Assembly: GCA_002104905.1 (NCBI GenBank)
Contig: MCFE01000663.1
Location: forward strand, 1 to 48,739
Reading direction: 5' to 3'
Origin: Basidiobolus meristosporus CBS 931.73
Taxonomy: Eukaryota > Fungi > Basidiobolomycota
DNA: 48,739 nt
The notes under the pieces were generated by a model. The model was not told the origin of the DNA, searched no databases, and saw only the letters and a program-made list of their open reading frames with translations. Position 1 is the first letter of the stretch. Every line of letters starts with the position of its first letter. The position numbers were made by a program, and so were the translations under genes. Of the stretch, positions 1 through 48,739 are shown in pieces.

Positions 1-819
1 CAATCCAAGTGTGTTCAAGATATACTAAAGAAGTATCAAATGGAAGATGGCAAACCAGCAGCTACCCCAATGGAGGCACACCTTAACTTGGTCAAAACTC
101 AACCAAATCAAGAGAGCCTTGTGGCATCTGAAAGTCCTGACTTTCCTTATCAATCTATGGTTAGCATTCTGATGTATATCATGCTTGGAACATGTCCAGA
201 TATCTCATTTTCAGTGGGAGTTGTCAGCCAGCACAATCAGAACTATGTATCTGATCATATTGCAGCAGTTAAGTGGATTTTTAGATATCTAAAAGGAACT
301 GCTGATATCTGCTTAAGATACACTTATAAGGATTTAGAACTGGATCTTGTGGGATACTCTGATGCAGATTGGGGACAAAATTTGGAAGACAGAAGATCAA
401 CTACAGGATATGCCTTTCTTTACTGTCAAGGAGCCATTTCATGGAATTCAAGAAAGCAACCAACCGTAGCACTTTCCACCACAGAGGCAGAGTATATGGC
501 AGCCTGTGAAGCTACAAAAGAAGCAATGTGGTTAAGAAAGCTTTTTACAGATTTAGGCCTATGTCAAAAAACACCTATTACTTTATTTCAAGATAATCAA
601 GGATGTATACAATTAGGTAGAAATCCAACTTTTCATGCCAGAACTAGGCACATAGATATTAGACATCATTTCATATGTGAAGCTATAGAGAATAACTTAG
701 TTAGCTTAGTTTACTGTCCTACAGATGAAATGATTGCAGACATATTTACCAAACCATTAGCTTGAGACAAGTTTGAATATCTTAGGTCAAAATTAGGACT
801 AGTCAGTATGAACATTTAG
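1..819 (+). pseudogene. copia pol (RT/RNase H) fragment with a premature stop
   Basis: TGA at 763-765 where the full-length copy has AGA; the family stop TAG is at 817-819. Confidence 0.9.
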
Positions 820-1490: not shown

Positions 1491-2358
1491 TGTACAGGGT
1501 TTCAGGGTTTTTGAGTATCACTGAGATTTCTGTTGTTAGTGATGTTTGATATTTTGGTATATCATTGAAGGTCAACACCAACACAGAATTTGGACAAGAT
1601 ATTCTAGACCATGATAGAATTGACAAAAATGGAGGGCTTGGGCTTGTTTATGAAAATTAAAACAATTGACATATCATTTTTGGGAGGTTGCAGTTCCAAT
1701 AGATGTATTTCACCAACAAATATGGTGACTCTATTGACCAAGTCTTCATTAAATCTGCTGGGGAGATGCTTGCAGTTGGGAGTTCTTCTATCAGGTAAGC
1801 CATCTTCCCTGCTAAGCACAACTGTAAGTTGCCTTCTGATGTAAAGCATTCCCTGCACTTTTGGCTCTGGTTAAGTGATATCCAACTAACTAAATCTTAT
1901 GTAAATTATTGACAGTCAGGTAATAAGCCAAGTGCAGTCTAACATCCTATGAGTAGTTTGGGTGTAGCTAGATATTTGCAATACTAGAGAGTAACAGTTT
2001 GGGGCTTTTAGCCTCCGGTAAGAATCTTGACAACAATAGATGTGATCGGGAAAACTGGTGGATCAAGTTGTTTTCATTAAAATGATTGGATGGATGTAAA
2101 GTAGTATTCAAGCTGTAACATGGTCTTGTCAAAATAAACACCCACAATATACTTAGGAAGGCCCTAGAAGCATGCATGCAAGGTTTAGGGACCTTGCGCA
2201 ACTTGACAGATTTTCATGCTCTGGGTACCAGAGATTCTGGTAGAATATTCAGAGTACAGCGCAAGAAGGAATTTGGCCAAGATACTCCAAGATTCATAGA
2301 CTACGATCAAAGTGACCAAGTCAATGGAATATTTAGGTGTATAGTTGGGATTGCGGCA
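1491..2358 (-). mobile_element. Ancient degenerate copia 5' end (5' LTR ~2014-2358, decayed PBS ~2002-2013, gag remnant)
   Basis: The reverse complement aligns patchily over a whole LTR length. GGCTAAAAGCCCC sits where the PBS GGTTATGAGCCCC should be. Minus-strand peptides RAKSAGNA and DLVNRVTIFVGEI resemble RAKTAKNA and NLINRITLLVDEM of the intact gag. Confidence 0.75.
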
Positions 2359-2707
2359 AGGTATGCACCAAGGCATCAGTTTCACCAGGGAGCATGGCCC
2401 TTGCTCGAAATACCTAGGAAGCACCCAAACGTATGAATCCAGTATAGTGAGCCCAATGAGACGAAACTAGCTTCTCTATGCTGCGTATGGAGAATTCACC
2501 CCTCGGAATTGGTTAGTAGCCTCCAGCACAAGATAGCTAGATCCAGATAAAAGAGGGTCACTGAGTCCCGCATGATTAGTGGCTTATGCACTGATGATTA
2601 ATCCATCCATTCCCAACGCAACACCTTATGTAAGCGTGATTCAACCGCAGCCGTGAACGATCATCTTACCGGGTTGAGCGACCACGGGGGTCACATGATC
2701 CGAGGGT

Positions 2708-2812
2708 CGAATTTTCTGGCAAAAACTGGCACCTTCCAACCTGCGGACAGGTGGCATTCAGAAGCCAAAATAGGCGGGCGAAAATGGGTTCCTCAACGTT
2801 CCATTTTGTTCG
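2708..2812. promoter_or_regulatory. Candidate heat shock elements upstream of the Sis1 gene
   Basis: GAAttTTCtgGcA at 2709-2721, plus three GTTC units at exact 10 bp spacing (2788, 2798, 2808), matching a step-type HSE. Yeast SIS1 is an Hsf1 target. Confidence 0.45.
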
Positions 2813-2973
2813 GTGAAGTTTTGAGAGCGAGACTCGGGACTCGGGACTATTGGCTGTCGAGGGGGGGGGTACTTCAACCGAAGCCAGGAGAAGCCCAGTT
2901 CTTATCTATCTCCTCCACCTCCCTCTCCTGGTTTTCCAACCGCGCGTATTTCCACCGTCTCCGACACTCAGCA

Positions 2974-4123
2974 ATGGCGAAAGATTATTACGGCATATTA
3001 GGGGTCTCCAAATCGGACAACGACGAGACCATCAAGAAAGCCTACAGAAAACAAGGTACGTGGCACTAGTCCCTTTACTTGAGGTCGTCTAGGATATAGA
3101 CTGATATGTCTTTGTTTGCCAGCTTTGAAGTGGCATCCTGATAGAAACCCGGACCAAAAAGAGCTAGCCGACAAGAAGTTCAAGGAATTGGCTGAAGCGT
3201 ATGAAGTTTTAAGTGATAAGAACAAGCGAGCCATCTACGACCAGTATGGTGAAGATGGGTTGAAGGGTGGCTTTGGTGGGGGTGGTGGCAGTGAAGGTGG
3301 TTTCCCTGGTGGCTTTCCCGGGGGCTTTCAGAGCGCATTTGGGAACATGCCCGGCGGAGCCAGCTTTTCTTTTGGCGGCCCTGGGGGCTCGGGTGGCTTC
3401 CGACCATTTACTCCAAGCAACGCTGAAGATATATTCAAGCAATTCTTTGGGATGAATGGTATGGGTGGCATGGGCGGCATGGGCGCCAACTTTATGGATA
3501 CGGATAACGACGCTGGTTTTGGAGGGTTTGGTGGGGCCGGAGCTCGACCTGGCTTTCAACGCTCGGCCACCAAACCAGTGATCCAACGCTCACTTCCGGC
3601 CTCCTTGGAGGATCTCTATAAGGGAGCCACTAAGCGTCTCAAGGTGACCAAGCGCCTGTATGACGCTGCCTCGGGGTTGTATACCCCTACCGAGAAGATT
3701 CTGACCGTGAACATCAAGCCGGGATGGAAGGCGGGAACGAAGATTCGCTTTTCCAACGAGGGAGATGAACTCCCTACAGGGGGGGCTCAGGATATAGAGT
3801 TTATTTTGGAAGAGAAGCCCCATCCGACATTCAAGCGGGAGAGTGAGCACCTTGTCATGAACCTGGACATCGATATTGTCGAGGCCCTCACCGGATTCAC
3901 CAAGACAGTTCAGAGCTTGGATGGCCGCACGATCGCCATCACCAACCGCACACCGGTCACTTCCCCCGGCCAAGAGCTGAGAATCTCCGGGGAAGGCATG
4001 CCCATATCGAAGCAGCCCGGGCGCAAGGGCGATCTCGTTGTCCGGGTCAATGTGCGGTTCCCAGCAGCTTTGACCACCTCGCAGAAGGAGGCCATTAGAC
4101 GTACATTCGGCAACGGCTACTAG
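2974..4123 (+). CDS. SIS1: Type II Hsp40/DnaJ co-chaperone, Sis1-like, 360 aa; exons 2974-3055 and 3123-4123
   Basis: J domain [11 protein letters not shown]...ALKWHPDRN with HPD, G/F- and G/M-rich linker, C-terminal [10 protein letters not shown] and GEGMP motifs, no zinc finger. GT-AG intron 3056-3122 restores the frame. Confidence 0.95.
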
Positions 4124-4484
4124 AGGGCATCGGCATTCGAATAGAAATACCCGGAATTGAGTGACAGCATCCCACGACAGCCAACCCCACCACAATCCCC
4201 TTTCACGCTGTATACTAATCAACCCCACCATCCACCTTTGTAATATTTGAAAACGACAGCCAAGGCGCGAACATAATCTTAATAAACCGTATGAACGTAT
4301 GAAATGCATCTGACCTCATCTCCAGCCCAACAGCAAATATATCCATCCCTGACAACCCGTAACTAAGCCGTGCTGTGCCAAGAAACCCTGCCAATCAGCC
4401 GATCAATCATGAAGGCTTAGAGCCCCAGGCTCATAAATAGCCGAGGCATCCGCACAGCACTTGGAGAATCTGACAAGAACCGAT

Positions 4485-5353
4485 ATGGAGCAAACACCAG
4501 CCACTGTTCATCACAGAAGCCACCATGGCGATGATGCCAGCAACCTTTCCAATCCCAAGTCTTCTTATTTCCAGGATACAGGCGGGGTTTATTACCAACC
4601 CAGCACCAGCACCAGCACCAGCCAGCTGAATATGCCACACCAGGAGCCCTATGTGATTGAGAAGGGGAAGGATGCCAAGCAGGTGCGAAGATCCAGCCGC
4701 CTTTGCTGCTGCTGCCAAACACGAGCACAGCGCATAGGGTGCGGTGTCTTCTGGCTGCTTTTCCTGATAGGTCTTGCTATCGCCGCCTACTTCTGCTGGC
4801 CTAGAGGGATGCCCCAGGTAAGCTTCCAAAGGGCCACGCTGATCACCCCCATGGCGCAGATCACTCAGAACGCCATCCCTGCCCTCACTACCGGCGGGAG
4901 CGGGTCCCTCGGAATCGACATCGACCTTATCCTGATGGTGCACAACCCAAACCTTATCAGTATCAAGTTGAGCAACATCACAGCCACGGTAAGTAGGCCC
5001 AGAAATTGGTCAGAGTAACAGAGAAATTAACGAACCACCATCCACAGGGATACTATCAAATCAACGGGGTCACCGTTGACATCGGTAAAGGAGCCCTCAA
5101 CCAAAGTGTCACCTTCCCGGCCAAGGGAGACCTGACCTTCCCGCTGCCCTTCCATCTTCTCTACACGGCCAGCGACCCGAACAGCCAGGCGGCCTTGAAG
5201 GACCTGGTAACCAGGTGTGGTATTCTGGGTGGCCCTCGACAGCCGTTGAGTATGAGCTATGTGGCCCAATTGGATATTGCGCTGATTTCTTGGTTGGGTA
5301 TCAAGCCGACGATATCCAACAACATCTCGTTTGACTGCCCTCTCACCCCTTGA
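4485..5353 (+). CDS. Single-pass membrane protein with CCCC cluster and LEA_2-like beta domain, ~269 aa; exons 4485-4988 and 5048-5353
   Basis: Hydrophobic segment GVFWLLFLIGLAIAAYFCWPR followed by the HNPNLISIKLSNITATGYY pattern typical of LEA_2 domains. In-frame GTAAGT...CAG intron 4989-5047. An upstream exon cannot be excluded. Confidence 0.75.
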
Positions 5354-20504: not shown

Positions 20505-23334
20505 TTACAAGATTACATGATGGTAGCTAGTATTGATGTTGGTGAACGTGTTGTGTTCGGAATTCTGATGCTCCATGAAGCGGTCGTTCTTGAGATTCAG
20601 TCGATCCAGAATGGTGTGGTAGATGAACTTGTAGGACCAGAGGTTTCCCTTGCGCCGGGTGATGTCTACTATGTAGAGTTTGCCTAGTTCCTTGAGTTTG
20701 CATATCTCCATCACGAAGTAGATTTCCTCGCCCGAGTCCACCGTCTCGTCGCCATAGATCGGCTCGATTGGTGGGGGCCCGTCAAAGTTGATTGGGTATG
20801 CTGGCTCCTGGCTTCCGATTTTGAGGAGCCTGGTAAATGCGCTTACGGTTCTTCGGCGAGATGAGTGTGCGGTGGAGCAGGTAGAGTGTGTCTCGTTGGA
20901 TATCACGGAATTCCGAGACTTGAGAGAGCTGGTGCAGGTCCTTTTCCTGCGGACACACTTCAATTTCCACTCGTACTCTTTCTTGATCTCGATCCCAAGC
21001 TCCTCCAAGAGCATTTTGATCTCTTGCATCAGCTCGACTGGGGATTTCGAAGTAACTGCATTGTCATCAATGGCTCCCGAATGGTACCGCAGTCTGAATT
21101 CATGGGAGACCCGTGAGTTGTTTCTTCTAGGGTGCGCCATATGTGATTCGAATGCTTGTTGCTGTCTGCCCAACGATTTCTTACGGAACCAATCCATGAC
21201 TTTGCGTGCTGCATTGGAGCTTACTGCTTGCTGAGATGACGATTGGGGATTAGGATGCATTACTGCGATGTCCGATTTGGCCAATCCTGAGGGGACAGGC
21301 TCAGGCTCAAAGCTACAATTCTTGACCATCGTTTCATAAGGCAGATTAATGGAGGGGGGATCGATAGACATTTGCGCCCCAGGTTGTGAAAAGTGAATGG
21401 TTGTAGGTCTGACGCGGCTGCATCCCTTTGGCTTCCGAGTTGGGCTTGATGGATATGCGAATGCCATTTCGACCGTCATCGGGTCATTCATTTCATCTTC
21501 ATCGGCCTCAATGATATCATTGAGGTGGTTCTCTTGAGGCTGCGGGCCAAGTAGGTTGGGTGTACGCGATTGATCATACTCAACCTGGATGGTGTGACGC
21601 TTGGGTGGTCGTGCAGTCTCTGCGAATGTGGGGGAGTCGGGCTCTGCATTGGCTTGCTCTGCCCCTTCACTACCACCCTTGTTCTTGCTCTTGCTCTTAC
21701 TCTTGCCCTCCTCGAAGATGTGTGCGTACGGTGCGAGCCAGTTGTGCTCCATGATCGTCTTCATGTCACACCGCTGTGTTGGGTCCGGTACGAGCATTCG
21801 TCGGAGCAGGTCCCGGGCGTCCGGGCTCACATAGTCGGGGAACACCAATGGCGTGGAGAGGATGTACTTGTACAGCAGGTTGATGTTGTCTCCATCCGGA
21901 TTCTCTGGGTCGTCGTCGAATGGGAGATACCCGCACAGCATCGCGTACAGAATCACACCGCACGACCAGATGTCCACTGCGGTTCCAACATACATCCCCT
22001 CGCTGACCACCAGCTCGGGGGCTGCATAGCATGGCGATCCACACGAGGTGGCCATCAGGTCGTTCGTCGGGCTCGAGAACTGGTTCGCAAACCCAAAATC
22101 GGTGATGATGATGTTCCGGTTTCGGTCGAGCAAGAGGTTTTCCTAGATCATCAGAGTCCACGTGTTAGCCTGCTATTCTTTCCATTTTGCTCGCCTCCTT
22201 CCCCCCCCGCCAATCTCTCATCTTTCTACTTCTGCCAAACGCCCCCTTCCTTTCTCTCCTCTTCCCCCCCCCTCTCGTCTCATCAACTTACCAGCTTCAG
22301 GTCCCGGTGAACAACGTTCTTCTCATGCATATAGCTCACCCCTAGAAATGTCACAGACTTGGTTTAGTTCCACTGCATCCATTGGCCTTGGCTCTTCACC
22401 TCCATCGCCATCTCCACCACTCTTCTCCCCTCTCGCTCCCCCTCTTGCTCTCTACTTACCGCTAATCAGCTGTGCGAACAATCTGCATGCCTCTCGCTCC
22501 TTCAGATATCTGTGTGCAAGAATGTGATCGAACAGCTCGCCACCTAGCCAATCACATGGCAATGTCAGCAAAATCGTCAATCACCACAATAATGATGCGT
22601 GTCAGTTCCACCGCAGCCCCATCCATTCCAGACACTCTTCGCTCACCGAAAGGTGTCCAGGTCCATGTGCATACACAGCACACAGACGCTCTTCTTTTCT
22701 CAAACCCATACACCTTGCTCACCGTTCTATGAGCACATGGGCTGCGGAGAGTGCTCAGGCAAGGGTGGGGCTGGGCAAACTTCGGAATAAACGGCAACAT
22801 ACCTGAAGCGTATTCGATGATGATTCCGATGTACTTGTCGGTTTCAATCACCTCGAATAGTCTGACGATGTTTGGATGGTCTAAGGACTAATAATTTGGG
22901 GGCAAAGAATACATTAACCACGGTTGGCGGTCCGAGAATATATACGAATGCTCTTACACTAAGTACGTTGACCTCCCGTTTGATTTTAATTAGTCGAGTC
23001 TCGGTGGCTACTAGTGCACGTTTTATAAGTTTGACGGCAACCTATTCACAGAGGGGTAAATAAAGTTTCCCGGAGAGGCGTTTCTTTCGAACCCTCGGCT
23101 CAAGCTTACCTCTTGCCCTGTCTCAGAGTGAATCCCCAACTTTACTTTGGCGAATTCACCCTCACCGAGTGTTCGTAATAATATGTATGGGCCAAATACA
23201 GGGCCAGAAACCCTTTGCTCTATGGCAAAAGTATCTGGAATGTCCAAGTTCATGGGCGAGTCGAATAGCATGCGACGGTTTTTCACTTCAATCGGGTCAG
23301 GAAAAACATCTGGTTGGGTGATGGGGGGAGACAT
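20505..23334 (-). CDS. KIN4: CAMKL Ser/Thr kinase, Kin4/Ppk1/KfsA-like, copy A, multi-exon, KA1-like C-terminus
   Basis: [67 protein letters not shown] and [24 protein letters not shown]. Confidence 0.9.
21566..22875. repeat. Near-identical direct repeat, partner at 25451-26761
   Basis: Side-by-side reading shows only about 3 substitutions and 2 homopolymer length differences, introns included. A further identical ~58 bp patch lies at 21484-21541 / 25369-25426. Confidence 0.95.
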
Positions 23335-24083: not shown

Positions 24084-27000
24084 TCAAGCGGTTATGATGT
24101 GATGGTTCGAGGCGGGTGTATCACTTGGGAGCGGGGTATTTCCGTTGTTGAATTCGTTGCTGGACAGGTCCAACCGATCCAGAATGGTGTGGTACAGGAA
24201 CTTGTAGGACCAGAGATTTCCTTTACGACGACGGATGTCGACAATGTATAGGTTGCCAAAGTCTTTGACCCGGCATATTTCAATGACGAAGCTGATCTCA
24301 TCTCCAGGATCCACCGTTTCATCACCATAAATCGGCTCTGGCTGGATCGGTGGGGTGCCGTAAGAGCTGCTGCTAGGCACCATAAACTCGCTCGGATAGC
24401 TGTAGTCCTCATGGTGTGTTCCAAGCTTCAGCAATCGACTGAAGGCACTAACTGTGCGTCTTCTGGCCGCGTGAGACCCTGAGCTATAGCCAGAGGTTGG
24501 GGAGAAGGCGTATGTGTTGTTGGTGTAGCTGGTTTGTCCCGTCGTGTTGGTATTGGCTGTAGTTTGGGTGTCGGTTGATATATGCGATATGGTGGACTTC
24601 ATAGTAGCGACTGAACCATTGCGTGTCTTTCGTTTACGTCTAGTACATTTGAGTTTCAAGTCGGTTTCCTTCTTGATTTCGATTCCCATGGCAAAGAGCA
24701 CTTGCTTGATGTCTTGGAAAACTTCGATGGGTGCTCGGGATGTCACTGCGTTTTGATCAATAGCTCCGCTATGAATACGCAGCTTGTATTCTTGCGAAGC
24801 TCGGATATTGCTTCGGCGGCCTGGTGTTGGGAGTGAGTCATAATAGTGAGTGCCATGGGGCTTGCCCAATGACTTCTTGCGGAACCAATCCATGACCTTT
24901 CTGGCTGCATTGGAACTCATGGATTTTTGCTTGACCGAGGAGTCAGCATTGTCAAAGTTGCCAATCAGCGTTGATGGGAACGCACTTTTAACTACTTTAC
25001 GCTTTTCAGCCCTGGCAGTGAGCTCATCTAACTTGGGAGTGCTGATATCCAGAGCAGCGAGTGTTTGGGATGTGATCGTTGTCTTCTCCTCGTCATCGCA
25101 AGCCTCAGGATGCGACAACTCGTTAGCATTGGGATCAATAAATTGCCCCCGACTTTCCTCCCGAGTTAGTATAACCGAAGGTAAGTCGGTTTGCATTTGG
25201 GGAGTAGGCTGCGAAAAATGAATTGTGGTTGGACGAATACGGCCATGGCTTTTGGGTTTCCGCATGGAGCTGCTCGGTGTACCAGTGAGGGGGGTACCGC
25301 TAAGAGGGGTAGCAGCCTTAGAGGGTGCTTGTGAAGGCTTCCCTGATGCCGGTTCGGTAGGTACCGAATCATTCATTTCATCTTCATCGGCCTCAATGAT
25401 ATCATTGAGGTGGTTCTCTTGAGGCTCTGGGCTAGGTAGATTTGGAACGGGCGATTGATCATACTCAACCTGGATGGTGTGACGCTTGGGTGGTCGTGCA
25501 GTCTCTGCGAATGTGGGGGAGTCGGGCTCTGCATTGGCTTGCTCTGCCCCTTCACTACCACCCTTGTTCTTGCTCTTGCTCTTACTCTTGCCCTCCTCGA
25601 AGATGTGTGCGTACGGTGCGAGCCAGTTGTGCTCCATGATCGTCTTCATGTCACACCGCTGTGTTGGGTCCGGTACGAGCATTCGTCGGAGCAGGTCCCG
25701 GGCGTCCGGGCTCACATAGTCGGGGAACACCAATGGCGTGGAGAGGATGTACTTGTACAGCAGGTTGATGTTGTCTCCATCCGGATTCTCTGGGTCGTCG
25801 TCGAATGGGAGATACCCGCACAGCATCGCGTACAGAATCACACCGCACGACCAGATGTCCACTGCGGTTCCAACATACATCCCCTCGCTGACCACCAGCT
25901 CGGGGGCTGCATAGCATGGCGATCCACACGAGGTGGCCATCAGGTCGTTCGTCGGGCTCGAGAACTGGTTCGCAAACCCAAAATCGGTGATGATGATGTT
26001 CCGGTTTCGGTCGAGCAAGAGGTTTTCCTAGATCATCAGAGTCCACGTGTTAGCCTGCTATTCTTTCCATTTTGCTCGCCTCCTTCCCCCCCCCCGCCAA
26101 TCTCTCATCTTTCTACTTCTGCCAAACGCCCCTTCCTTTCTCTCCTCTTCCCCCCCCCTCTCGTCTCATCAACTTACCAGCTTCAGGTCCCGGTGAACAA
26201 CGTTCTTCTCATGCATATAGCTCACCCCTAGAAATGTCACAGACTTGGTTTAGTTCCACTGCATCCATTGGCCTTGGCTCTTCACCTCCATCGCCATCTC
26301 CACCACTCTTCTCCCCTCTCGCTCCCCCTCTTGCTCTCTACTTACCGCTAATCAGCTGTGCGAACAATCTGCATGCCTCTCGCTCCTTCAGATATCTGTG
26401 TGCAAGAATGTGATCGAACAGCTCGCCACCTAGCCAATCACATGGCAATGTCAACAAAATCGTCAATCACCACAATAATGATGCGTGTCAGTTCCACCGC
26501 AGCCCCATCCATTCCAGACACTCTTCGCTCACCGAAAGGTGTCCAGGTCCATGTGCATACACAGCACACAGACGCTCTTCTTTTCTCAAACCCATACACC
26601 TTGCTCACCGTTCTATGAACACATGAGCTGCGGAGAGTGCTCAGGCAAGGGTGGGGCTGGGCAAACTTCGGAATAAACGGCAACATACCTGAAGCGTATT
26701 CGATGATGATTCCGATGTACTTGTCGGTTTCAATCACCTCGAATAGTCTGACGATGTTTGGGTGGTCGAGCGACTAATTAAATTGGAAATACCAACGAAT
26801 TAGGAATATTTCATAATTTCTGATACTGAATTCGGGAATAGCATCATCAAATGAAGCGAATGGATAAAATGGGCAGTATTGGGGAAATCATAGGGGAAAT
26901 TTGAGTGGGTTACACTTACTCTAAGAACGGTTATCTCCCGTTTGATTTTGGCCATTCTACTCTCTGAGTCAACGTTGGCTTTCTTGATAAGCTTGATGGC

Positions 27001-39197: not shown

Positions 39198-39386
39198 TGT
39201 TGTAGAAGTCTTGAAGATATTGGAAGCGTGTTTTTTACTTTACAATCTATTGAATGTAAAGTGGTATTTATACTTTTACATTATCTTTGCATAATAAACT
39301 CATAGAATAGGTTAAGGAGGGTCCTAAGGGCATGTGTGCCAAGTTTGGGGCTGCTTGAACAATTTAGAGAATTTTCATGTTCTGGG
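39198..39386 (-). repeat. Partial copia LTR interrupted by the plus-strand LTR at 39387
   Basis: TGTTGTAGAAGTCTTGAAGATATTGGAAG...TTTTCATGTTCTGGG aligns to the LTR reverse complement and stops abruptly. Confidence 0.85.
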
Positions 39387-40342
39387 TGTTGTAATTATTA
39401 AGCTGTCACCAGAATACTGATGCTAGTTTAGTCACATAGATCTTATTTTTTGATTAGCATTCTGTCCTGACCAGATTTCTTGTTGGGATTTAGTTAGAAT
39501 ATTTTCACCAAATTATCAGGTACCAAGATTATGATCCTTCTCAAAGTTGTCCAAAAGCCCCCAAACTTTGCACACATATTCTTGGGACCTTCCTTAGCAA
39601 AGTCTACATGTTTGTTTGCTCTACTTCATCAAAAGTATAAACCATACTTTTGATCAATAAATCTATAAGTTAATAACATGTATATCCTCTAGTTCTCCAC
39701 ATCACTTCCAATACTCCTCAGAATATTGCAACAGGTTATGAGCCACAAGCTTATTGCTCTCTTGGCGTCTATTAGCCTTGGATCATTTTCTGCTAATCTG
39801 GAGAAAGACTTTCCGCACTATTGCCCTGCCAAAGTTAATGATGACTGCTGCTGCTACAAGGACTATGTTCATGAAGATATTGCTGTGGAGAAGAAGGCTG
39901 TGCCTTCCAAAGACTCATTCAGTAACTACTCAAGCTGGCTATGGAGGAGAATCTATCAAGTTCACAGGTAAATATGTCAAGAAATGTAGTATGTGTTGTA
40001 AAAATTCGTAATTCCACCTAAATATTCACCTAACTTAGCCACTTAGATCATCACCTTCAAATCCTAGAGAATACTGACCAAATTCCTTGTTGGGATTTAC
40101 TTAGAATATTTTCACCAAAATACCAGGTACCCAGAACATGAAAATTCTCAAAGTTGTCCAAACAGCCCCAAACTTTGCACACATGTTCTTGGGACCTTCC
40201 TTAACCTATCCTATGTGTTTGTAATGCCAAGACCATGTAAAAGTATAAATACTACTTTTACATTCAATAAATCATTAAGTGAAAACCACATAATCTACTT
40301 GTTCTCCAAATCACTTCCAATATCTCCAAGACTCTTACAACA

Positions 40343-40354
40343 GGTTATGAGCCC
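40343..40354 (+). other. Primer binding site complementary to the anticodon stem-loop of initiator tRNA-Met (half-tRNA priming)
   Basis: GGTTATGAGCCC directly follows the LTR and is the reverse complement of GGGCUCAUAACC, as in yeast tRNAiMet and the Ty5 PBS. Confidence 0.9.
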
Positions 40355-43300
40355 CGGGCTGTCACTCTCTGCAATGTCTACTACTGCTATTACTGGAATT
40401 TTTCCCTCTGCTGAAAAGTTGGATGGCTCTAACTACCAAGTGTGGAAGGTGAAGATGAAGATGCTGCTACAAGAAAGAGGCCTTTGGGATATTGTCATGG
40501 GAGAAGAATGCCCTCCTAAAAACGTGAGAGAGGAAGCCTTAAAGTAACAGAAGAAAGAACAAAGTGCCTTTAACTGCATTTGCCTTAATGTCAAGGACAA
40601 ATTGCTAATTCAATGCTCAAGAGCAAAAACGGCAAAGAATGCCTGGAAGGCATTAGAAGACACCTAACAGTCATGTTCAGCTGCCAAGAAAATGTATCTG
40701 AGAAGAAAATTCTTTACTACAAAGATGCTGCCAGGAGAAGAAATGAAAAATCTAATTAACAGAATTACCCTGCTGGTAGATGAGATGGAATCTGTGGGCG
40801 TACCAACTACTGATGAGGATGTGATAGTTACCATCCTGAATAGCCTGACAGACAAGTTTCAGGGCCTTGTATCAGCCCTAGAGTCCAGAACTGAAGATTT
40901 GACCTTAAATTACGTATATGGAAGGCTCCTGGATGAAGAATTAAGAAAATCAAGTGCAAATAAGAAGGAAGAAGAAAATGCTTTAATAAGCAATGATAAC
41001 CAACAAAGGAGGTATCCAAGACCCTACAAAGGCAACAGCAACCTATTTTGCAACTACTGCAAAAGGAAAGGACACACATCAGACCGGTGTCTCAAAAAGA
41101 GAGATTATCAGCAAAAGAAGCCCAAATATGGAAATGCTGCAACAACTGAAGATAGACTATTCATATCTGCACTAAATATGACCACAAACAAGGGTTCTCA
41201 GATGTGGTATATTGACTCTGGAGCTTCTCAACACTTTACACACCAAAAAGAACTTTTTACCCAATATCAAGAAATTCCAATTAAGAAGGTTTTCATGAGT
41301 GACAATAGAACACTTGATGCAGTGGGAGAAGGAACTATCCAAGTAAACCTTAGAAGCAGTGAAGGAAGCCATACACTGACCTTTAAAGAAGTACTCTATG
41401 TACCAGAAATAGCCAAAAACCTACTCTCTGTAAGCAAGGCCACAGCAGAAGGACTCAGTTTCAGTTTTGACAATTCTGGATGCAGGATCACTGATCAAAA
41501 TGGTGCTCATATTGCTTCAGGCATCAGAGATCAGAATCTATACAAGTTGACTTATATTCCATCATATCTGGAAGCCAATATAAGTAACTTAAATGAAGAA
41601 ACACCAATGCTTTGGCACAGGAGATTTGGACACATCAATTTTGATTATTTGCGTAAAATGATCAAAGATCAGCTAATTTCTGGAGTGAAAATTGATCCCC
41701 CAGCTAATTTGAAGCACTGTGAAGCCTGCATATATGGGAAACAAGCCAGACAACCGTTCAAGAGCTCTGGGTTAATCAAAACTAAGAAAAAATTAGATCT
41801 AATTCACTCAGATCTGTGTGGACCTATGCAAAATTTATCCTTAGGCGGGATGTAGTATTTAATCACTTTTATTGATGATTATACAAGATACACATGGGTC
41901 TACTTCATGGAGAGAAAGGAAGAAGCTCTGTCTAAGCTCAGGGAGTTTAAAGCCATGGTGGAGAGAGAAACTGGTGAAAAAATCAAGAAAATACACTCTG
42001 ACAATGGTGGAGAATATACCTCAAAACTCTTCATCCACTTCTGCAAAATTCATGGGATAAAGCATGAGACTACTGTACCATACCCCCCACAGCAAAATGG
42101 AGTAGCAGAACAAGCTAACAGATCAATAATTGATATGGCAAGATCTATGATCCATGATCAAAAATTATCCTATGATTTTTGGGCGGAATCAGTTGCCACT
42201 GCTGTATACCTTAAAAATAGGAGTTATAACAGAATACTTCGTGATTCTACTCCATTTGAAGCATGGTATGGATACAGACCAGGTGCAGAACATCTAAGAA
42301 TATTTGGGTGTACAGAATATGCCAAAAAACTGGCCGGAAATCAGTCAAAATTTGAGCCAAAAAGTGCAAAATGCATATTTTTGGGCTACTGCAATGAGGG
42401 TAAGGCATACAGACTCTACAATACCAAAGCAAAGAAGCTTATCAAGTCCAGGGATGTGTTGTTTGATGAAAATTCAAAATTATTACAAAAAATGACATCA
42501 GATGATGACGAAAATTTGATCTCAAGTTCACCAATTGTCAGGATTGAATCAGAGCAAAACAATGAAGATTTTTTCACTCCAGAGGACTCTACAACCGTGG
42601 TTCAGCCAGAATCAGTGCCCAGGAATATCCCAGAAGTGATCATTCCAGTATCAAATGCCCGGAGATCAAATCGGACAAGAAATAGCCCAAATTACTATAT
42701 CAATGAGGGTACAAACTTAGCCTATGCCTATTCAGTCCATATTGATGAACCCCAGACTGTAAAAGAGGCCCTAAATAGCCCTCAGACAAAGTTTTGGAGA
42801 TCTGCAATGACTGAGGAATATCAGGCCCTGATGGAAAATCAAACTTGGGACTTAGTCAAATTACCAATCAGCCAAAAATCAATTGGATGCAGATGGGTCT
42901 TCAAGACAAAATACAAGGCTGATGGCACAGTTGAAAGATACAAAGCAAGACTTGTAGCCAAAGGACACTCTCAAACAAAAGGACTTGACTATACTGAGAC
43001 CTTTGCACCGGTAGCCAAGTTTAATTCCATCAGATTAATATTGGCTATTGCAGCCAAATATAAGTTTTTTATTCATCAAATGGATGTAAAAGCTGCATTT
43101 TTGAATGGAGAACTTGATGAGGATGTGTATATGGACCAGCCTGATGGGTTTGTTGACCAAAATAACCCCCATTTGGTCTGCAAGCTCAAAAAGTCACTAT
43201 ATGGTCTCAAACAATCACCAAGAGCCTGGAATTGCAAGATAGATTCTTATTTGCAATCCTTGAGTTTCAAAAGAAGTAATGCTGACTATAGTATATACTA

Positions 43301-44318
43301 TAAGCCAGATAGAGCAAATCCAGTTCTATTAGCTCTATATGTGGATGATCTTATTATAGCCGCCAATAACCTAGAAACATTGGAAGAGACTAAATCCAGC
43401 CTATCTAAGGAGTTCAAGATGTCTGATTTAGGAGAACTTAGTTACTACTTAGGGATTAAGTTCTCCATAGACATAAGTACCCAGACTATTACCCTAAGCC
43501 AATCCAAGTATATTCAAGATATACTAAAGAAGTACAAAATGGAAGATTGTAAACTGGCAGCTACCCCAATGGAGACAAACCTTAACTTGGTCAAAACTCA
43601 ACCAAATCAAGAGAGCTTGGTGCCATCTGAAAGCCCTGACTTTCCTTATCATTCTATGGTCGGCAGTCTGATGTATATCATGCTTGGAACACGTCCAGAT
43701 ATCTCATACTCAGTGGGAGTTGTCAGCCAACATAATCAGAACTATGGATCTGATCATATTGCAGCAGTTAAGCGGATTTTTAGATACCTAAAAGGAACTG
43801 CTGATATCTGCTTAAGATACACTTATAAGGACTCAGAACAAGATCTTGTGGGATACTCTGATGCAGATTGGGGACAAAATTTGGAAGACAGAAGATCCAC
43901 CACAGGATACACCTTTCTTTACTGTAAAGAAGCAATTTCATGGAATTCAAGAAAGCAACCAACCGTAGCACTTTCTACTACAGAGGCAGAGTATATGGCA
44001 GCCTGTGAAGCTACAAAAGAAGCAATGTGGTTAAGAAAACTCTTTACAGATTTAGGCCTATGTCAAAAAACACCTATTACTTTATTTCAAGATAATCAAT
44101 GATGTATGCAATTAGGTAGAAATCCAACTTTTCATGCTAGAGCCAAGCACATAGATATTAGACATCATTTCATACGTGAAGCTATAGAGAATAACTTAGT
44201 TAGCTTAGTTTACTGTCCTACAGATGAAATGATTGCAGACATATTTACCAAACCATTAGCTAGAGACAAGTTTGAATATCTTAGGTCAAAATTAGGACTA
44301 GTCAGTATGAACATTTAG
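40347..44318 (+). pseudogene. copia gag-pol, single frame of 1324 codons with four in-frame stops (40545, 40665, 41853, 44100)
   Basis: KLDGSNYQVW, CNYCKRKGHTSDRC knuckle, WYIDSGASQH protease, LWHRRFGH/CEAC, IHSDNGGEY, YKARLVAKG, QMDVKAAFLNG, LYGLKQSPRAW, LYVDDL and RNase H motifs all in one frame. Confidence 0.95.
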
Positions 44319-45130
44319 CTGAGTGGGAGTGTTGTAAAGATTCGTAATTCCACCTAAATATTCACCTAACTTAGCCACTTAGATCATCACCTTCAAATCC
44401 TAGAGAATACTGACCAAATTCCTTGTTGGGATTTACTTAGAATATTTTCACCAAAATACCAGGTACCCAGAACATGAAAATTCTCAAAGTTGTCCAAACA
44501 GCCCCAAACTTTGCACACATGTTCTTGGGACCTTCCTTAACCTATCCTATGTGTTTGTAATGCCAAGACCATGTAAAAGTATAAATACTACTTTTACATT
44601 CAATAAATCATTAAGTGAAAACCACATAATCTACTTGTTCTCCAAATCACTTCCAATATCTCCAAGACTCTTACAACAGTATGTTGGTGCTCTACCAATA
44701 ATGAATAAAATTGTGTAACTCCAGCAATTGAGGGTCCAGATCTATAATGAAATATATTGCTATATGTATTCATATGACCTCAAATGACTGTTGGCAAGCT
44801 TTTGAATAGTATATTCTCCTGAATTGCCAAAAAAAATAGATCATTGAATGATTGCTGGAGGAGGATTTTACCAAATCTGTTGCTGCTCAAAATAAGACTG
44901 AGAATGCAAATACTGGAGCTGTTAACCGCCATTTTGAACTACCATTAATGGGAAAAGATCTCAGGAACTAGCTCCCTGAGTTGTAAGGATCCTGATGATA
45001 TACAATACATGTATATCCACCTGAAGTACTGATATGTACTACATAATCCAATGGAAGAATGGAATAATTGTATCAAGTGTTTTGATACTGAAACTAATGT
45101 ACCAGGAGCCAAATATAGAGCTGTTGGACA

Positions 45131-45484
45131 TAGGGTTAGGGGGGAGGAAAGTCACCAAGTGGTGAAAGCTGTATTTACTTATAACAACTATTTAAAGAAG
45201 CCAAATTAATCTGAAGTTATTCCTGGAAAGCTAGGTCTGAGAGATATCTTCCTGGTAAGCCAGGCCTGAGAGTTGAGAAGCTGAGTGGTACTCTATTTCC
45301 CAGTTAGCTAGGTCTGAGAGAGGTTTCCTGGAAAGCCAGGCCTGAGAAGTGTGAATCTGAGTATATCTGAGGTCAGTTGTACTGGTTTGTGGTAGCTGAA
45401 TTGCGGCCGTAATGGCCAGTAGACTGGGGGGATGGAGGGGAATATCTGGGCAATCACTGGCCAAATTTACTATGTAAATCTTAA
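45131..45484 (-). mobile_element. Short telomere-associated element sharing the LINE 3' tail (non-autonomous partner or 5'-truncated relative)
   Basis: Begins TAGGGTTAGGGGGGAGGAAAGTCACCAAGTGGTGAAAG, homologous over about 60 nt to 46291-46350. The body is unrelated to the RT ORF end and holds a 2 x ~77 bp repeat (45220-45372). Confidence 0.7.
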
Positions 45485-45501: not shown

Positions 45502-46267
45502 TGTTGTAAGAGTCTTGGAGATATTGGAAGTGATTAGGAGAACAAGTAGATTATGTGGTTTTCACTTAATGATTTATTGAATGTAAAAGTAGTATTTATA
45601 CCTTTACCTGGTCTTGCATTACAAACACGCAGAATAGGTTAAGGAAGGTCCCAAAAACATGTGTGCAAAGTTTGGGGCTGTTTAGACAACTTTGAGAATT
45701 TTCATGTTCTGGGTACCTGGTATTTTAGTGAAAATATTCTAAGTAAATCCCAACAAGGAATTTGGTCAGTATTCTCTAGGATTTAAAGGTGATGATCTAA
45801 GTGGCTAAGTTAGGTGAATATTTAGGTGGAATTACGAATTTTTACAACACTCCCACTCAGCTAAATGTTCATACTGACTAGTCCTAGTTTTGACCTAAGA
45901 TATTCAAACTTGTCTCTAGCTAATGGTTTGGTAAATATGTCTGCAATCATTTCATCTGTAGGACAGTAAACTAAGCTAACTAAGTTATTCTCTATAGCTT
46001 CACGTATGAAATGATGTCTAATATCTATGTGCTTGGTTCTAGCATGAAAAGTTAGATTTCTACCTAATTGTATACATCATTGATTATCTTGAAATAAAGT
46101 AATAAGCGTTTTTTGACATAGGCCTTAATCTGTAAAAAGCTTTCTTAGCCACATTGCTTCTTTTGTAGCTTCACAGGCTGCCATATACTCTGCCTCTGTA
46201 GTAGAAAGTGCTACGGTTGGTTGCTTTCTTGAATTCCATGAAATTGCTTCTTTACAGTAAAGAAAGG
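45502..46267 (-). mobile_element. Truncated copia (3' LTR 45502-45849, PPT 45850-45858, RNase H fragment) broken at a telomeric repeat tract
   Basis: Reverse complement of 43912-44678 at high identity. Copia sequence ends at ...AGAAAGG and switches to GGTTAGGG. Confidence 0.95.
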
Positions 46268-46299
46268 GGTTAGGGTTAGGGTTAGGGTTTTAGGGGGGG
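46268..46299 (+). repeat. Short interstitial telomeric tract: GG(TTAGGG)3 TTTTAGGGGGGG
   Basis: Read directly between the broken copia and the LINE 3' tail. Confidence 0.95.
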
Positions 46300-48554
46300 A
46301 GACAGTCACCAACAGGTGAAATCTTTATTTCAGTTGAAACAAAGAAGTCAGCGCTACTGTTGTAGCTTTGATACAAGAGTGTGTAGCTGAGGGGAATTTG
46401 TAGGTAAGTTAATAAGAAGTGATGATAGTTCATCAGTGCTCAAGACACTGTTCAGTGGGAAGGGGGGTAGCAAGAGAGGTAAGAATGACTTGTGAACAAC
46501 ATTAATGAGGGGAATGTGATAAGGATTGATATTCATCATAAAGGGAGTGTGCTGCTGCAGATATTGCTGCCAAAGGTCTGTCAAGTACTTCAGGTAAGCC
46601 AGCTTGGGTTTTTCTGACTGCAGAATATAGTGAGCAAACTTCTTGACTTCAGGATCTCCAAGTATAGTTCTCCAGCAGGAGCCAGGTGTTGTGTGGTGTG
46701 TTCTCTTCCAGGCCTTAATCAGTGGGTTGTTGCAGTTGTGAAGTCTGAGGTATAATCTGGTTCTAAGGTAGAGAAGTCTGATCTTATAGGGCATAAACCC
46801 AAAAGCACCAAGAATAGCATGTCTGTAGGGGCATTCAGGCAAATGAGGCACCAAGGAGGTAATGCACCATACTGCAAACTTGTCAAGCTTAGTGCAGTCT
46901 CTAGAAGTAAGAGAGAGAAGTGGTAAGCCAAATTCCAGGACAGGGAAAACAAACTGCTTGAGTAGAAGGAGGCAGCTTGGAGCTGAAGTTGTAGGAGGAG
47001 TAACAGCCAGTAGCTTGTGGAGTGCCTGTCTTGCCAGGATAATTCTCTTCTTCAGGTGTGCTCCAGAGTCTAGTCCAGTAGGAAGGAAAGGAAAGCCAAG
47101 ATATGTAGCAGAAACCTGAGCAGGTAGAGTGGAGTTCTCCAAGTTGATGGGAGAGCCCAAAGGTACTGTCTTTGCAATGGAAAGCTGGAGATTATTCTTC
47201 TGCAGATACTGGTGGATGGTCTGGGAGTCTTGTTGCACATTGGAGGAGGATATTCTGATGTCATCAGCAAAGAGAGTAACCAGGCAGTCAGCTGAGAGTC
47301 TTGGGAAATCATTCAGGAAGATGGCAAACAGTATAGGACCAAGCACAGAGCCTTGAACCACTCCATTAGGAACTGAGAACACAGCTGATTGCTCACTTGG
47401 GTGCAGAATTCTTGCTTGTGGATCCAGAAACAGAGACCTGACAAGGAGGGTGAGAGAGGTACTGGAGAAGCATTGCAACTTGGACCAAAGCAGATTTCTG
47501 TCAACTGTATCAAAGGCCTTAGAAATATCAAACAGAACAGAGGGATACTTGCACTGGAGAGAGTGATCTTGGCTAAGTATGACTGCATATTCCAAGGAGA
47601 GGCCAGGAACAAAGCCAAACTGTGCAGGATGAAACTTGAGGGAGTCAGAGTAGAGCTCCTGAGCAAGCAGAAGCTCAAACACCTTTCTGCAGGTGGGCAG
47701 CAGAGATATTGGCCTGTAGGAGCTAGGATCCAGGTGCTTTCCTTTACCCTTGTACAGTGGCAGAACATTTGCAAAGGACCATTCCTCAGGAGTAGAAAGC
47801 TGGGCTGAGCATTGCTGAAACAGTGGAAGCAGAAGTGCAGACATGGCCTTGGTACTAGTCTTCAGAAGCTCATAGGAGATTGTGTCCACACCTGGAGCAG
47901 TAGAGTTGGGAAGCCTCTTGAGCACATTATGGATTCTCCTTTGATCAAGTGCAAGTGGGATAGGCAGAGTCTTGAAGTCAGGATGAAAGCCAGGAGCTGA
48001 GTACTGCTTTGTAGAGAAGAAGATGTTAGCCAGCTGTTCTGTTGAAGGTAACTTCCTGGAAGAGGGCCTCATTGCCCTGTAGAGTCTTGATACTGTTCTT
48101 GTTATAGAGTTGGAAGATTGCAGAGGCAAAGAACTCATAATATGATCCCAGAGCTGAGTATGCAGAGTGTGGTGAATTGCCTTGGAGTGGTGTATTGCTG
48201 TCAGGAGGAGTTTCTCTGTTTTTGGGTTAGGGAAACTCAGGTAGCTTTGTTGCAGGGCTGAAACAATGGATTCCCATTTTCTTGAGGTAACAGCAGTAGT
48301 CTTGCATGGCAGTGAGAGGGAGGCAGACACCAGAATCAGATGCTTCACAAAGAGCCAGGCATAGTTGAGATCATCTGGCAGAGAAAGTAGCAAACTGGCA
48401 AGCTTCAAGTAGTTCCCAAAGTCTTTCTTCTGATTCTTGGTAGCGTTGTGGGTGAGCACAGTAAGTTTTGGCAGCTTCTTCTTCACAACTGGTTGCATAG
48501 AAAGGGACCAGGCTGGGTGGTCAGAGGCTCTCAAGGATCCTAACTCAGCTCCAC
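46293..48554 (-). mobile_element. Telomere-associated non-LTR (LINE-type) retroelement, 5' end capped by the telomere, 3' end oligo-C plus telomeric repeats instead of poly(A)
   Basis: RT ORF, ~55 nt 3' UTR with AATAAA and a TCACC/GGTGA hairpin, then CCCCCCC-TAAAA-(CCCTAA)3 on the sense strand. Confidence 0.92.
46354..48534 (-). CDS. Non-LTR reverse transcriptase, 726 uninterrupted codons, 5'-incomplete (no ATG at the start, no complete endonuclease)
   Basis: APGVDTI, WSFANVLPLYKGKG, YRPISLL, QFGF, DISKAFDTV, GVVQGSVLGPILF, FADD, YLG and thumb LKQFVFPVLEFG. Begins at ASDHPAW, like the last motif of an APE endonuclease. No CCHC/REL or RNase H seen. Confidence 0.93.
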   Translation of the reverse strand: MRASDHPAWSLSMQPVVKKKLPKLTVLTHNATKNQKKDFGNYLKLASLLLSLPDDLNYAWLFVKHLILVSASLSLPCKTTAVTSRKWESIVSALQQSYLSFPNPKTEKLLLTAIHHSKAIHHTLHTQLWDHIMSSLPLQSSNSITRTVSRLYRAMRPSSRKLPSTEQLANIFFSTKQYSAPGFHPDFKTLPIPLALDQRRIHNVLKRLPNSTAPGVDTISYELLKTSTKAMSALLLPLFQQCSAQLSTPEEWSFANVLPLYKGKGKHLDPSSYRPISLLPTCRKVFELLLAQELYSDSLKFHPAQFGFVPGLSLEYAVILSQDHSLQCKYPSVLFDISKAFDTVDRNLLWSKLQCFSSTSLTLLVRSLFLDPQARILHPSEQSAVFSVPNGVVQGSVLGPILFAIFLNDFPRLSADCLVTLFADDIRISSSNVQQDSQTIHQYLQKNNLQLSIAKTVPLGSPINLENSTLPAQVSATYLGFPFLPTGLDSGAHLKKRIILARQALHKLLAVTPPTTSAPSCLLLLKQFVFPVLEFGLPLLSLTSRDCTKLDKFAVWCITSLVPHLPECPYRHAILGAFGFMPYKIRLLYLRTRLYLRLHNCNNPLIKAWKRTHHTTPGSCWRTILGDPEVKKFAHYILQSEKPKLAYLKYLTDLWQQYLQQHTPFMMNINPYHIPLINVVHKSFLPLLLPPFPLNSVLSTDELSSLLINLPTNSPQLHTLVSKLQQ

Positions 48555-48739
48555 TTAGGGTTAGGGTTAGGGTTAGGGTTAGGGTTAGGGTTAGGGTTAG
48601 GGTTAGGGTTAGGGTTAGGGTTAGGGTTAGGGTTAGGTTAGGGTTAGGGTTAGGGTTAGGGTTAGGGTTAGGGTTAGGGTTAGGGTTAGGGTTAGGGTTA
48701 GGGTTAGGGTTAGGGTTAGGGTTAGGGTTAGGGTTTAGG
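48555..48739 (+). repeat. Telomere (TTAGGG)n, G-strand running toward the chromosome end
   Basis: 13 perfect units, one TTAGG (48633-48637), 16 perfect units and a terminal TTTAGG; 185 bp to the window end. Confidence 0.99.

What the first reader, a model, noticed from the sequence alone, without database searches (positions are those of the whole stretch)
46268..48739. Telomere-capped LINE-type RT element attached to the chromosome end by its 3' end, with no poly(A)
Seen: an intact LINE-type RT ORF reads inward from the telomere. Its 3' end is joined to (TTAGGG)3 through a G7 run and its 5' end is capped directly by the terminal array. Established: this polarity matches Drosophila HeT-A/TART, Bombyx TRAS and the endonuclease-less Athena/Coprina Penelope-like elements. 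The fungal telomeric retroelements I know are either REL-endonuclease types (MoTeR, Cnl1) or Penelope-like (Coprina). This RT instead has the DISKAFDTV/QGSVLGP/PVLEFG signatures of APE-class LINEs and no C-terminal CCHC-REL. Inference: a possibly undescribed telomere-specific LINE lineage in an early-diverging fungus that extends chromosome ends alongside telomerase.
Basis: partly seen in the sequence, partly recalled or inferred. Interest (0 to 1): 0.92.

Follow-up and report, generated by a model that had tools for sequence, protein, structure and literature searches.

The report
Telomere-building LINE at a fungal chromosome end
The last 2.4 kb of this Basidiobolus contig is a cut-short copy of a young, very abundant jumping gene that is copied only onto chromosome tips, stacking head-to-tail under the normal TTAGGG cap much as in fruit-fly telomeres, which has not been described for a LINE of this type in fungi.

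Summary
At 46270-46299 a (TTAGGG)3-TTTTAG-G7 tract joins a broken Copia to the 3' end of a minus-strand LINE copy (46300-48553). A ~185-nt TTAGGG array caps its 5' end at the contig end. There is no poly(A).

One correction: the 726-aa ORF is not an intact gene. It is a 5'-truncated piece of ORF2.

The full element is 4558 nt:
- ORF1, 502 aa
- one in-frame TGA
- ORF2, 922 aa, with a divergent APE-fold nuclease and an RT
- a 3' module: AATAAA, hairpin, C-run, TAACCC

The genome is Basidiobolus (89.5 Mb). It holds well over 100 copies at 98-99% identity. In all 30 loci read they lie head-to-tail, 5' end outward, mixed with an ORF1-only family and a SINE-like family that share the 3' module. Sixty-five tails end in C4-12 plus 1-27 nt of telomeric sequence (median 5). 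Terminal arrays are 91-221 nt.

Best reading: reverse transcription primed from the G-strand 3' end of nearly bare chromosome ends, then capping by telomerase. Whether the conserved nuclease takes part is open.

TERT, a clade-level RT tree and a whole-genome table could not be done. The scan had already flagged these arrays on many other pieces of this genome.

The parts
45131..45481 (-). Older SINE-like element (family C), same orientation, with the same TTAGGGGGG tail junction at its left edge
   Evidence: blastn against a natural C copy: 91.7% over 351 nt. TTAG5+ motifs lie at 45136, 45487 and 46290.
45502..46269 (-). Reverse-oriented Copia fragment (LTR plus the pol C-terminus), broken at 46269/46270: a former chromosome break point
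   Evidence: 97% identical to the 3' part of the intact Copia at 39.2-44.7 kb. The translation matches the Copia pol C-terminus.
46270..46287 (+). (TTAGGG)3: short telomeric tract that healed the break. It is the primer side of the junction.
   Evidence: Sequence, regex. Together with the TTTTAG variant repeat that follows, it is among the longest internal tracts of the 65-68 junctions examined.
46288..46299 (+). TTTTAG variant repeat plus a G7 run, the complement of the element's 3'-terminal C-run
   Evidence: C-run lengths in family A tails range from 5 to 12, with a mode of 6-7.
46300..46353 (-). 3' UTR with the shared 3' module: AATAAA (46329..46324) and the hairpin TCACC-TGTT-GGTGA (46319..46306)
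   Evidence: The stem is unchanged (a few copies carry point substitutions) and the loops vary across families A, B and C and relatives from other samples.
46354..48534 (-). 5'-truncated ORF2 (726 of 922 aa): last nuclease motif (SDH), linker, RT, C-terminal domain
   Evidence: the ORF listing. RVT_1 E 1e-25. 98-99% aa identity to at least 61 other copies.
48555..48739 (+). Terminal (TTAGGG)n array (~30 repeats) capping the truncated 5' end, running to the contig end
   Evidence: Seven of 30 loci have equivalent terminal arrays of 91-221 nt on elements truncated at different points.

Best explanation
The stretch is the outermost, 5'-truncated copy of a telomere-specific APE-type LINE of Basidiobolus.

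Shown:
- The full element is 4558 nt: a 5' UTR, ORF1 (Zn-ribbon-like region, coiled coil, RRM-like domain), a single in-frame UGA, and ORF2 (divergent APE-fold nuclease plus RT).
- It ends in a 3' module of AAUAAA, a small hairpin, a C-run and UAACCC, with no poly(A).
- Copies, an ORF1-only family and a SINE-like family share this module and stack head-to-tail with their 5' ends toward the chromosome end.

Inferred:
- The RNA's C-run/CCCUAA tail pairs with the 3' end of the G-rich strand at a chromosome end that has lost nearly all its repeats.
- The RT extends that end (target-primed reverse transcription), so the element's antisense strand continues the G-strand.
- The new 5' end, often incomplete or eroded, is then capped with TTAGGG by telomerase.
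- In this window a break inside a Copia was first healed with about 3 repeats, then received the element, then a ~185-nt cap.
- ORF2 is probably made by readthrough of the UGA.
- The role of the conserved nuclease is unresolved.
For: - Junction and cap in the window.
- At least 62 ORF2 copies at 98-99% aa identity, mostly with open frames. At least 120 contigs carry ORF1.
- All contigs of known length above 20 kb have the copy within 11 kb of an end with the 5' end outward. Thirty of 32 plus-strand 3' ends lie in the first 14 kb of their contig.
- In 30 loci every element has the same orientation, and there is no reverse telomeric tract.
- Of 65 tails, C-runs are 4-12 long. The telomeric extension has median 5 nt, 59/65 are 9 nt or less, and the maximum is 27. 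Terminal arrays are 91-221 nt.
- Terminal caps sit on different truncation points: A positions 909, 1474, 1714, 1812, 1920 and 2302.
- Short-read contigs show 3' depth exceeding 5' depth and many joints back to 46300, bridged by G-run or TTAGGG letters.
- Relatives at 48-80% identity from 8 other samples keep the same tail, the arrays and the ORF1-UGA-ORF2 layout.
- APE fold: pLDDT 86, with the TRAS1 endonuclease as best PDB match.
Against: - The nuclease domain is conserved across six lineages with nearly all catalytic residues: N, Y, GDxN, D and SDH, with only E changed to D. That fits a nick-dependent mechanism better than a purely end-primed one.
- No RNA data exist, so the true RNA 3' end is unknown. 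The AAUAAA signal would predict a poly(A) tail that is never seen.
- Junctions are partly non-independent if arrays spread between ends by recombination.
- TERT was not verified.
- Contig lengths are known for only 16 contigs. Two plus-strand copies (C781, C613) lie far from the left end of their contigs.
Confidence: 0.75

Rival explanations
1. Nuclease-dependent, site-specific insertion, as for TRAS and SART. The APE domain nicks the G-strand inside double-stranded TTAGGG repeats, TPRT starts from that nick, and the distal repeats are rejoined to the 5' end.
For: The APE fold is present and conserved (42-76% identity across lineages) with most catalytic residues. The best structural match is the telomere-specific TRAS1 endonuclease. 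The orientation would be the same.
Against: Nicks at random positions in a 90-220-nt array should leave proximal tracts of up to about 200 nt. In fact 59/65 are 9 nt or less and none exceeds 27 nt. Many tails abut non-telomeric DNA after only 1-3 nt, which is too little for a repeat-recognising nuclease. The catalytic Glu is Asp, and the PTYWP loop is deleted in all lineages.
Confidence: 0.25
2. The arrays, including this copy, are spread mainly by recombination between chromosome ends (break-induced replication, unequal exchange). Retrotransposition is rare or extinct.
For: Several junction types recur, for example the A tail followed by a full SINE head in L019, L026, L029 and L030. Near-identity of copies could also reflect homogenisation.
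Against: Most junctions are unique, with different 5' truncation points and element orders. ORF1 and ORF2 are open in most copies. The window's junction to a broken Copia is a one-off. Long-term purifying selection is seen across lineages.
Confidence: 0.12
3. Assembly artefact: a repeat collapsed or chimerically joined to telomeric reads.
For: The contig ends in repeats, and many contigs of this assembly break inside the element.
Against: The same junction architecture occurs on dozens of contigs. It also occurs in Logan's own contigs of the 2016 runs (X1-X4), an assembly made separately from this one, and in unrelated metagenomic contigs of relatives.
Confidence: 0.02

Closest known systems
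Drosophila HeT-A / TART / TAHRE telomeric arrays (Jockey clade)
   Same: Head-to-tail terminal arrays with the 3' end toward the centromere. Variable 5' truncation. An RT-encoding element plus a Gag/ORF1-only partner. Addition to broken or receding ends (abstracts).
   Different: Here the junctions carry a C-run plus TAACCC instead of oligo(A). Canonical TTAGGG caps coexist with the elements. A SINE-like third partner shares the tail. The host is a fungus. RT identity to any arthropod LINE is 37% or less.
Bombyx / Tribolium / aphid TRAS and SART (R1 clade)
   Same: APE-type LINEs specific for telomeric repeats that coexist with telomerase-type repeats. The TRAS1 endonuclease is the best structural match of the nuclease domain.
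   Different: Here there is no poly(A), internal tracts are 27 nt or less, and no C-terminal CCHC is present.
Endonuclease-deficient Penelope-like elements (Athena, Coprina)
   Same: Restricted to chromosome termini (abstract).
   Different: Those have a TERT-like PLE RT and no nuclease. This element has a LINE RVT_1 RT (best PDB match L1 ORF2p), an APE-fold domain and an ORF1.
MoTeR / FoTeR / Cnl1 (CRE clade, fungi)
   Same: Fungal non-LTR elements confined to telomeres, with 3' ends followed by TAACCC repeats and no poly(A).
   Different: Those group with the CRE clade, carry a REL endonuclease and have 3-7 repeats at the 3' end. This element has an N-terminal APE-fold domain, two ORFs, and mostly 1.5 repeats or fewer.
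Endonuclease-independent L1 retrotransposition at dysfunctional telomeres
   Same: A LINE RT using an uncapped chromosome end as primer (reference listed).
   Different: That is an accidental side reaction of a dispersed element with poly(A). Here it appears to be the element's normal, specialised mode, with a telomere-complementary tail.

Membership tests
APE-type non-LTR (LINE) retrotransposon | LINE-type reverse transcriptase domain | tested here: met
   RVT_1 E 1e-25. Best solved relative by sequence is L1 ORF2p, E 6e-13.
APE-type non-LTR (LINE) retrotransposon | APE/EEP-fold endonuclease N-terminal to the RT | tested here: met
   Model pLDDT 86. Foldseek hits: TRAS1 EN E 1.7e-10, L1 EN, APE1. 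The Pfam Exo_endo_phos_2 match is below cutoff, E 3e-4. The catalytic Glu is replaced by Asp in all lineages.
APE-type non-LTR (LINE) retrotransposon | ORF1 upstream, no LTRs, frequent 5' truncation | tested here: met
   ORF1 of 502 aa. Variable 5' ends in 30 loci. Depth gradient with 3' above 5'.
APE-type non-LTR (LINE) retrotransposon | Target-site duplications | not testable with these tools
   Terminal additions and repeat flanks leave nothing to duplicate. None was seen.
TRAS/SART (R1 clade) | Poly(A) tail and insertion at a fixed site within long telomeric arrays | tested here: not met
   No A-runs. Telomeric tracts proximal to the elements are 1-27 nt, median 5.
TRAS/SART (R1 clade) | RT groups within the R1 clade | not tested
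   No named reference sequences were available. The nearest non-family hits are unnamed arthropod and Mucorales LINEs at 30-37% identity.
HeT-A/TART/TAHRE | Head-to-tail terminal arrays, 3' end proximal, with a Gag-only partner | tested here: met
   The family B ORF is homologous to the ORF1 C-terminus (36% identity, E 2e-22).
HeT-A/TART/TAHRE | Oligo(A) junctions and no telomerase repeats | tested here: not met
   Junctions are C-run plus TAACCC. TTAGGG arrays of 91-221 nt cap the ends.
MoTeR/FoTeR/Cnl1 (CRE clade) | Restriction-enzyme-like endonuclease C-terminal to the RT | tested here: not met
   No such domain in Pfam at E 0.01. Only two invariant Cys lie in the C-terminal 230 aa.
EN(-) Penelope-like elements (Athena/Coprina) | PLE/TERT-like RT without an endonuclease | tested here: not met
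   A LINE RT plus an APE-fold domain.
EN(-) Penelope-like elements (Athena/Coprina) | 3' tail complementary to the telomeric G-strand, and truncated copies capped by repeats | tested here: met

The most novel reading that the evidence does not exclude
Basidiobolus maintains or rescues its very numerous chromosome ends with a three-part retroelement system: an autonomous APE-LINE, an ORF1-only element and a SINE, all sharing one 3' RNA tag. The system acts as a back-up telomerase on ends that have lost their TTAGGG repeats. The ancestral APE nuclease has been repurposed (Glu changed to Asp, a loop deleted) and ORF2 is made by UGA readthrough. This would be an independent fungal convergence on the Drosophila solution, caught while telomerase is still active.
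Probability: 0.45. Interest if true: 0.85.

Novelty: new variant of a known kind. Interest (0 to 1): 0.77.

Why it matters
Telomere-specific retrotransposons are central to ideas about how telomerase and retroelements relate, but the known cases are few:
- insects (R1 and Jockey clades)
- rotifer and basidiomycete Penelope-like elements
- CRE-clade elements in ascomycetes and Cryptococcus

An APE-type LINE lineage with a telomere-complementary tail would be a new, independent origin. It builds Drosophila-like arrays on very many ends of an early-diverging fungus while TTAGGG caps persist.

It would also offer a tractable system for three questions. Do such elements compete with telomerase or back it up? 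What does a conserved but altered nuclease do at a natural DNA end? How does one 3' RNA tag recruit an RT to several partner RNAs?

It also explains why this assembly fragments at contig ends.

Tried and rejected
- **Whole-genome table and TERT.** I did not try to get round this. So there is no TERT search and no contig-length table beyond 16 contigs.
- **Nuclease domain by sequence against PDB.** 0 hits at E 10. The fold search was needed instead.
- **ORF1 against Pfam.** Only sub-threshold Zn-ribbon and coiled-coil hits. The fold search of its C-terminal domain gave RRM-like matches at Z 6-7.7, which is weak.
- **SINE head.** ARAGORN and Rfam found no tRNA on the copy tested. Only box-A-like and box-B-like strings are visible.
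- **Named-clade RT phylogeny.** Not done, because no named reference sequences can be obtained. The names of the nearest hits were uninformative.
- **RNA evidence.** No RNA run holds the element. Contig-type runs cannot show RNA ends.
- **Literature.** Six searches found no description of telomeric LINEs in Basidiobolus. The Gladyshev and Arkhipova 2007 paper is not held.
- **'Endonuclease-less LINE' reading.** Rejected, because the window's copy is simply truncated and full copies keep the domain.
- **Handling of sequence.** Natural copies served as references.
Full report
**The observation**

One search shows the junction on the + strand. A sequence that is the reverse complement of a Copia pol C-terminus ends at 46269. 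It is followed by (TTAGGG)3 at 46270-46287, then TTTTAG, then G7 at 46293-46299, then AGACAGTCACC. From there a minus-strand ORF runs 48534..46354 (726 aa). It matches RVT_1 at E 1e-25. At 48555 a TTAGGG array begins and runs to the contig end at 48739. There is no A-run at the element's 3' end. One point needs correcting: the ORF is open but it is not an intact gene.

**What the full element is**

A search of the window's own genome (89.5 Mb, 1366 contigs) found 62 scored ORF2 copies out of 1628 candidates. They are 98-99% identical in protein. Most have no stop codon and sit in an open frame of 922 aa.

I extended one natural copy on contig C573. This gives a 4558-nt element with these parts:
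- a 5' UTR of about 225 nt
- ORF1 of 502 aa
- a single in-frame TGA
- ORF2 of 922 aa
- a 54-nt 3' UTR

The window's copy corresponds to element positions 2302-4558. It begins at the last nuclease motif (SDH).

ORF2 has RVT_1 and a sub-threshold Exo_endo_phos_2 match. An AlphaFold model of residues 1-250 has pLDDT 86. Its best PDB match is the TRAS1 endonuclease domain (E 1.7e-10, TM 0.70), followed by the L1 endonuclease and APE1.

I aligned the domain to canonical LINE nucleases and across six lineages. The following residues are conserved: N8, Y93, G-D126-x-N128, D171 and S200-D201-H202. The catalytic Glu is Asp (LIDV) in every lineage, and the PTYWP loop is deleted. Domain identity across lineages is 42-76%, against 59-85% for the RT. 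The domain is therefore under constraint.

ORF1 has no Pfam family. It consists of a CxxC..CxC region, a coiled coil, and a C-terminal domain whose model resembles an RRM (Z 6-7.7, weak).

The ORF1-ORF2 boundary is GCC-TGA-CTN in frame, both in this genome and in six relatives. ORF2 has no in-frame ATG in its first 140 or so codons. Stop-codon readthrough is the likely way ORF2 is expressed.

**Where the copies are**

Contig lengths became known for 16 contigs. On every one longer than 20 kb the copy lies within 11 kb of an end with its 5' end pointing outward.

Of the 32 plus-strand matches to the 3' end, 30 lie in the first 14 kb of their contig. ORF1 matches occur on about 120 contigs.

In the 30 loci fetched, every element is in one orientation. 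These include the LINE (family A), a roughly 0.95-kb ORF1-only family (B) and a roughly 0.53-kb SINE-like family (C). No reverse telomeric tract occurs.

Seven of these loci, including the window's own, end in (CCCTAA)n arrays of 91-221 nt. In six the array sits on a family A copy truncated at a different position: 909, 1474, 1714, 1812, 1920 and 2302. In the seventh (L007) it caps a different element.

The family B ORF is homologous to the ORF1 C-terminus (36% identity, E 2e-22).

**The junctions**

All 65-68 element 3' ends examined read AATAAAGATT, then a hairpin (TCACC, loop, GGTGA), then a short pyrimidine stretch, then a C-run of 4-12, then TAACCC. No poly(A) occurs.

In-register telomeric sequence after the C-run has a median of 5 nt. 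It is 9 nt or less in 59 of 65 tails and never exceeds 27 nt. It is followed directly by the next element or by unique DNA.

The hairpin stem is essentially invariant (a few copies carry point substitutions), while the loop differs between families and between relatives.

Logan's contigs of the 2016 runs (X1-X4), probably the source sample, give separate support. Depth rises about 3.5-fold from the 5' to the 3' end of the stretch. Many joints go from variable internal positions back to 46300. They are bridged by letters such as AGGGGGG, TAGGGGGG or AGGGTTAGGGTAGGGGG.

**Relatives**

Only five close relatives turned up among 5.8 billion proteins (48-80% identity). About five cluster representatives exist among 1.84 billion. 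The next hits are generic LINE RTs at 37% identity or less, from arthropods and a Mucorales fungus.

The relatives' contigs come from eight samples. They carry the same tail, the same head-to-tail joins and the same ORF1-TGA-ORF2 layout.

The host is Basidiobolus. A window gene has 67-79% identical relatives, probably paralogues, in B. meristosporus CBS 931.73, and a 75% identical one in B. ranarum.

**Mechanism**

Orientation and tail imply that the G-strand 3' end primed cDNA synthesis on an RNA ending in C-run/CCCUAA. That step is inferred, not observed.

Two variants fit this. In one the primer is a nuclease nick inside the telomere. In the other it is the natural end.

The contrast between internal tracts (27 nt or less) and terminal arrays (91-221 nt) argues that additions happen on ends that have lost almost all repeats. 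This favours end-priming on worn or broken ends. The window's own history fits: a broken Copia, then 3 repeats, then the element, then the cap.

The conserved nuclease argues that the enzyme still does something. I leave that open, at about 0.25 for a nick-dependent route. Recombination surely also moves arrays, but it cannot explain the many unique truncation points.

Capping of different non-telomeric 5' ends by regular TTAGGG arrays implies telomerase activity. TERT itself was not checked.

**Comparison with known systems and novelty**

- The system works like Drosophila HeT-A/TART: terminal arrays with a Gag-only partner.
- It also works like the endonuclease-deficient Penelope-like elements Athena and Coprina: a telomere-complementary tail, with truncated copies capped by repeats.
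- It belongs to none of these families. It has no poly(A), it has a LINE RT with an APE fold, and telomerase repeats are present.
- It is not a MoTeR/FoTeR/Cnl1-type element, since it has no REL domain.
- It differs from TRAS/SART, which insert in long arrays and carry poly(A).

No paper in the library describes it. I rate it a new variant of a known kind.

The scan has already noted these arrays on many other pieces of this genome. This window adds a clean example of the proximal boundary and of the terminal cap.

**Limits**

- There is no TERT check, no whole-genome table and no named-clade phylogeny.
- There are no RNA data.
- The junctions are not all independent events.

Noticed in passing
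window 46354-48534; full element on C573 (L012 plus L037): The 4558-nt element has only 7 CpG (observed/expected 0.03), all in the UTRs. The window's gene region has 0.74 and the neighbouring Copia 0.15. The ORFs are nevertheless intact in most copies.
   Followed up: partly
L012:4267-4269 and the same site in L031, L032, L033, L038, L039, L040, L043: ORF1 and ORF2 are in the same frame, separated by one TGA in the conserved context GCC-TGA-CTN. ORF2 has no early ATG. Programmed stop-codon readthrough is likely, which is unusual for a LINE.
   Followed up: partly
L016:11-712 (-), L010:4389-5084 (-), L037 about 1722-2423 (-): An element of roughly 0.95 kb encodes only an ORF1-like protein (36% identical to the ORF1 C-terminus). 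It carries the same 3' module. Some copies are open and some are frameshifted. It is a HeT-A-like partner.
   Followed up: partly
window 45131-45481; L037 821-1351 (-): A SINE-like element of roughly 0.53 kb with box-A-like and box-B-like strings (GGTTCAAATCC) and an internal CCCTAACCCT. It has the same 3' module. ARAGORN and Rfam do not call a tRNA.
   Followed up: partly
contigs C901 (195,199 nt) and C1034 (over 266 kb): Both contigs have outward-facing element copies at both ends. They may be complete chromosomes of only about 0.2-0.27 Mb. Many contigs of 160-195 kb end in these arrays, which hints at a very large number of small chromosomes.
   Followed up: no
window 1-765 and 39200-44700: The contig's left end starts inside a Copia pol fragment that is 94% identical to the intact Copia further right. 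The assembly therefore breaks in repeats at both ends.
   Followed up: no
window 20505-22133 and 24084-26018 (-): Two tandem paralogous ORFs carrying a protein-kinase C-lobe plus a KA1 domain.
   Followed up: no
L006, L011, L015, L021, L029 proximal parts: Element copies lying centromere-proximal to the young copy are often much more diverged (93%, 82% or 67% identity). This is consistent with older layers lying deeper in the array, but the loci were chosen through the young copies.
   Followed up: no
runs X5 (2022) and X6 (2015): Two runs of other labelled organisms hold a few 150-260-nt pieces that are about 99% identical to the element, at depth 2-3. This may be trace Basidiobolus DNA or a close strain.
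   Followed up: no
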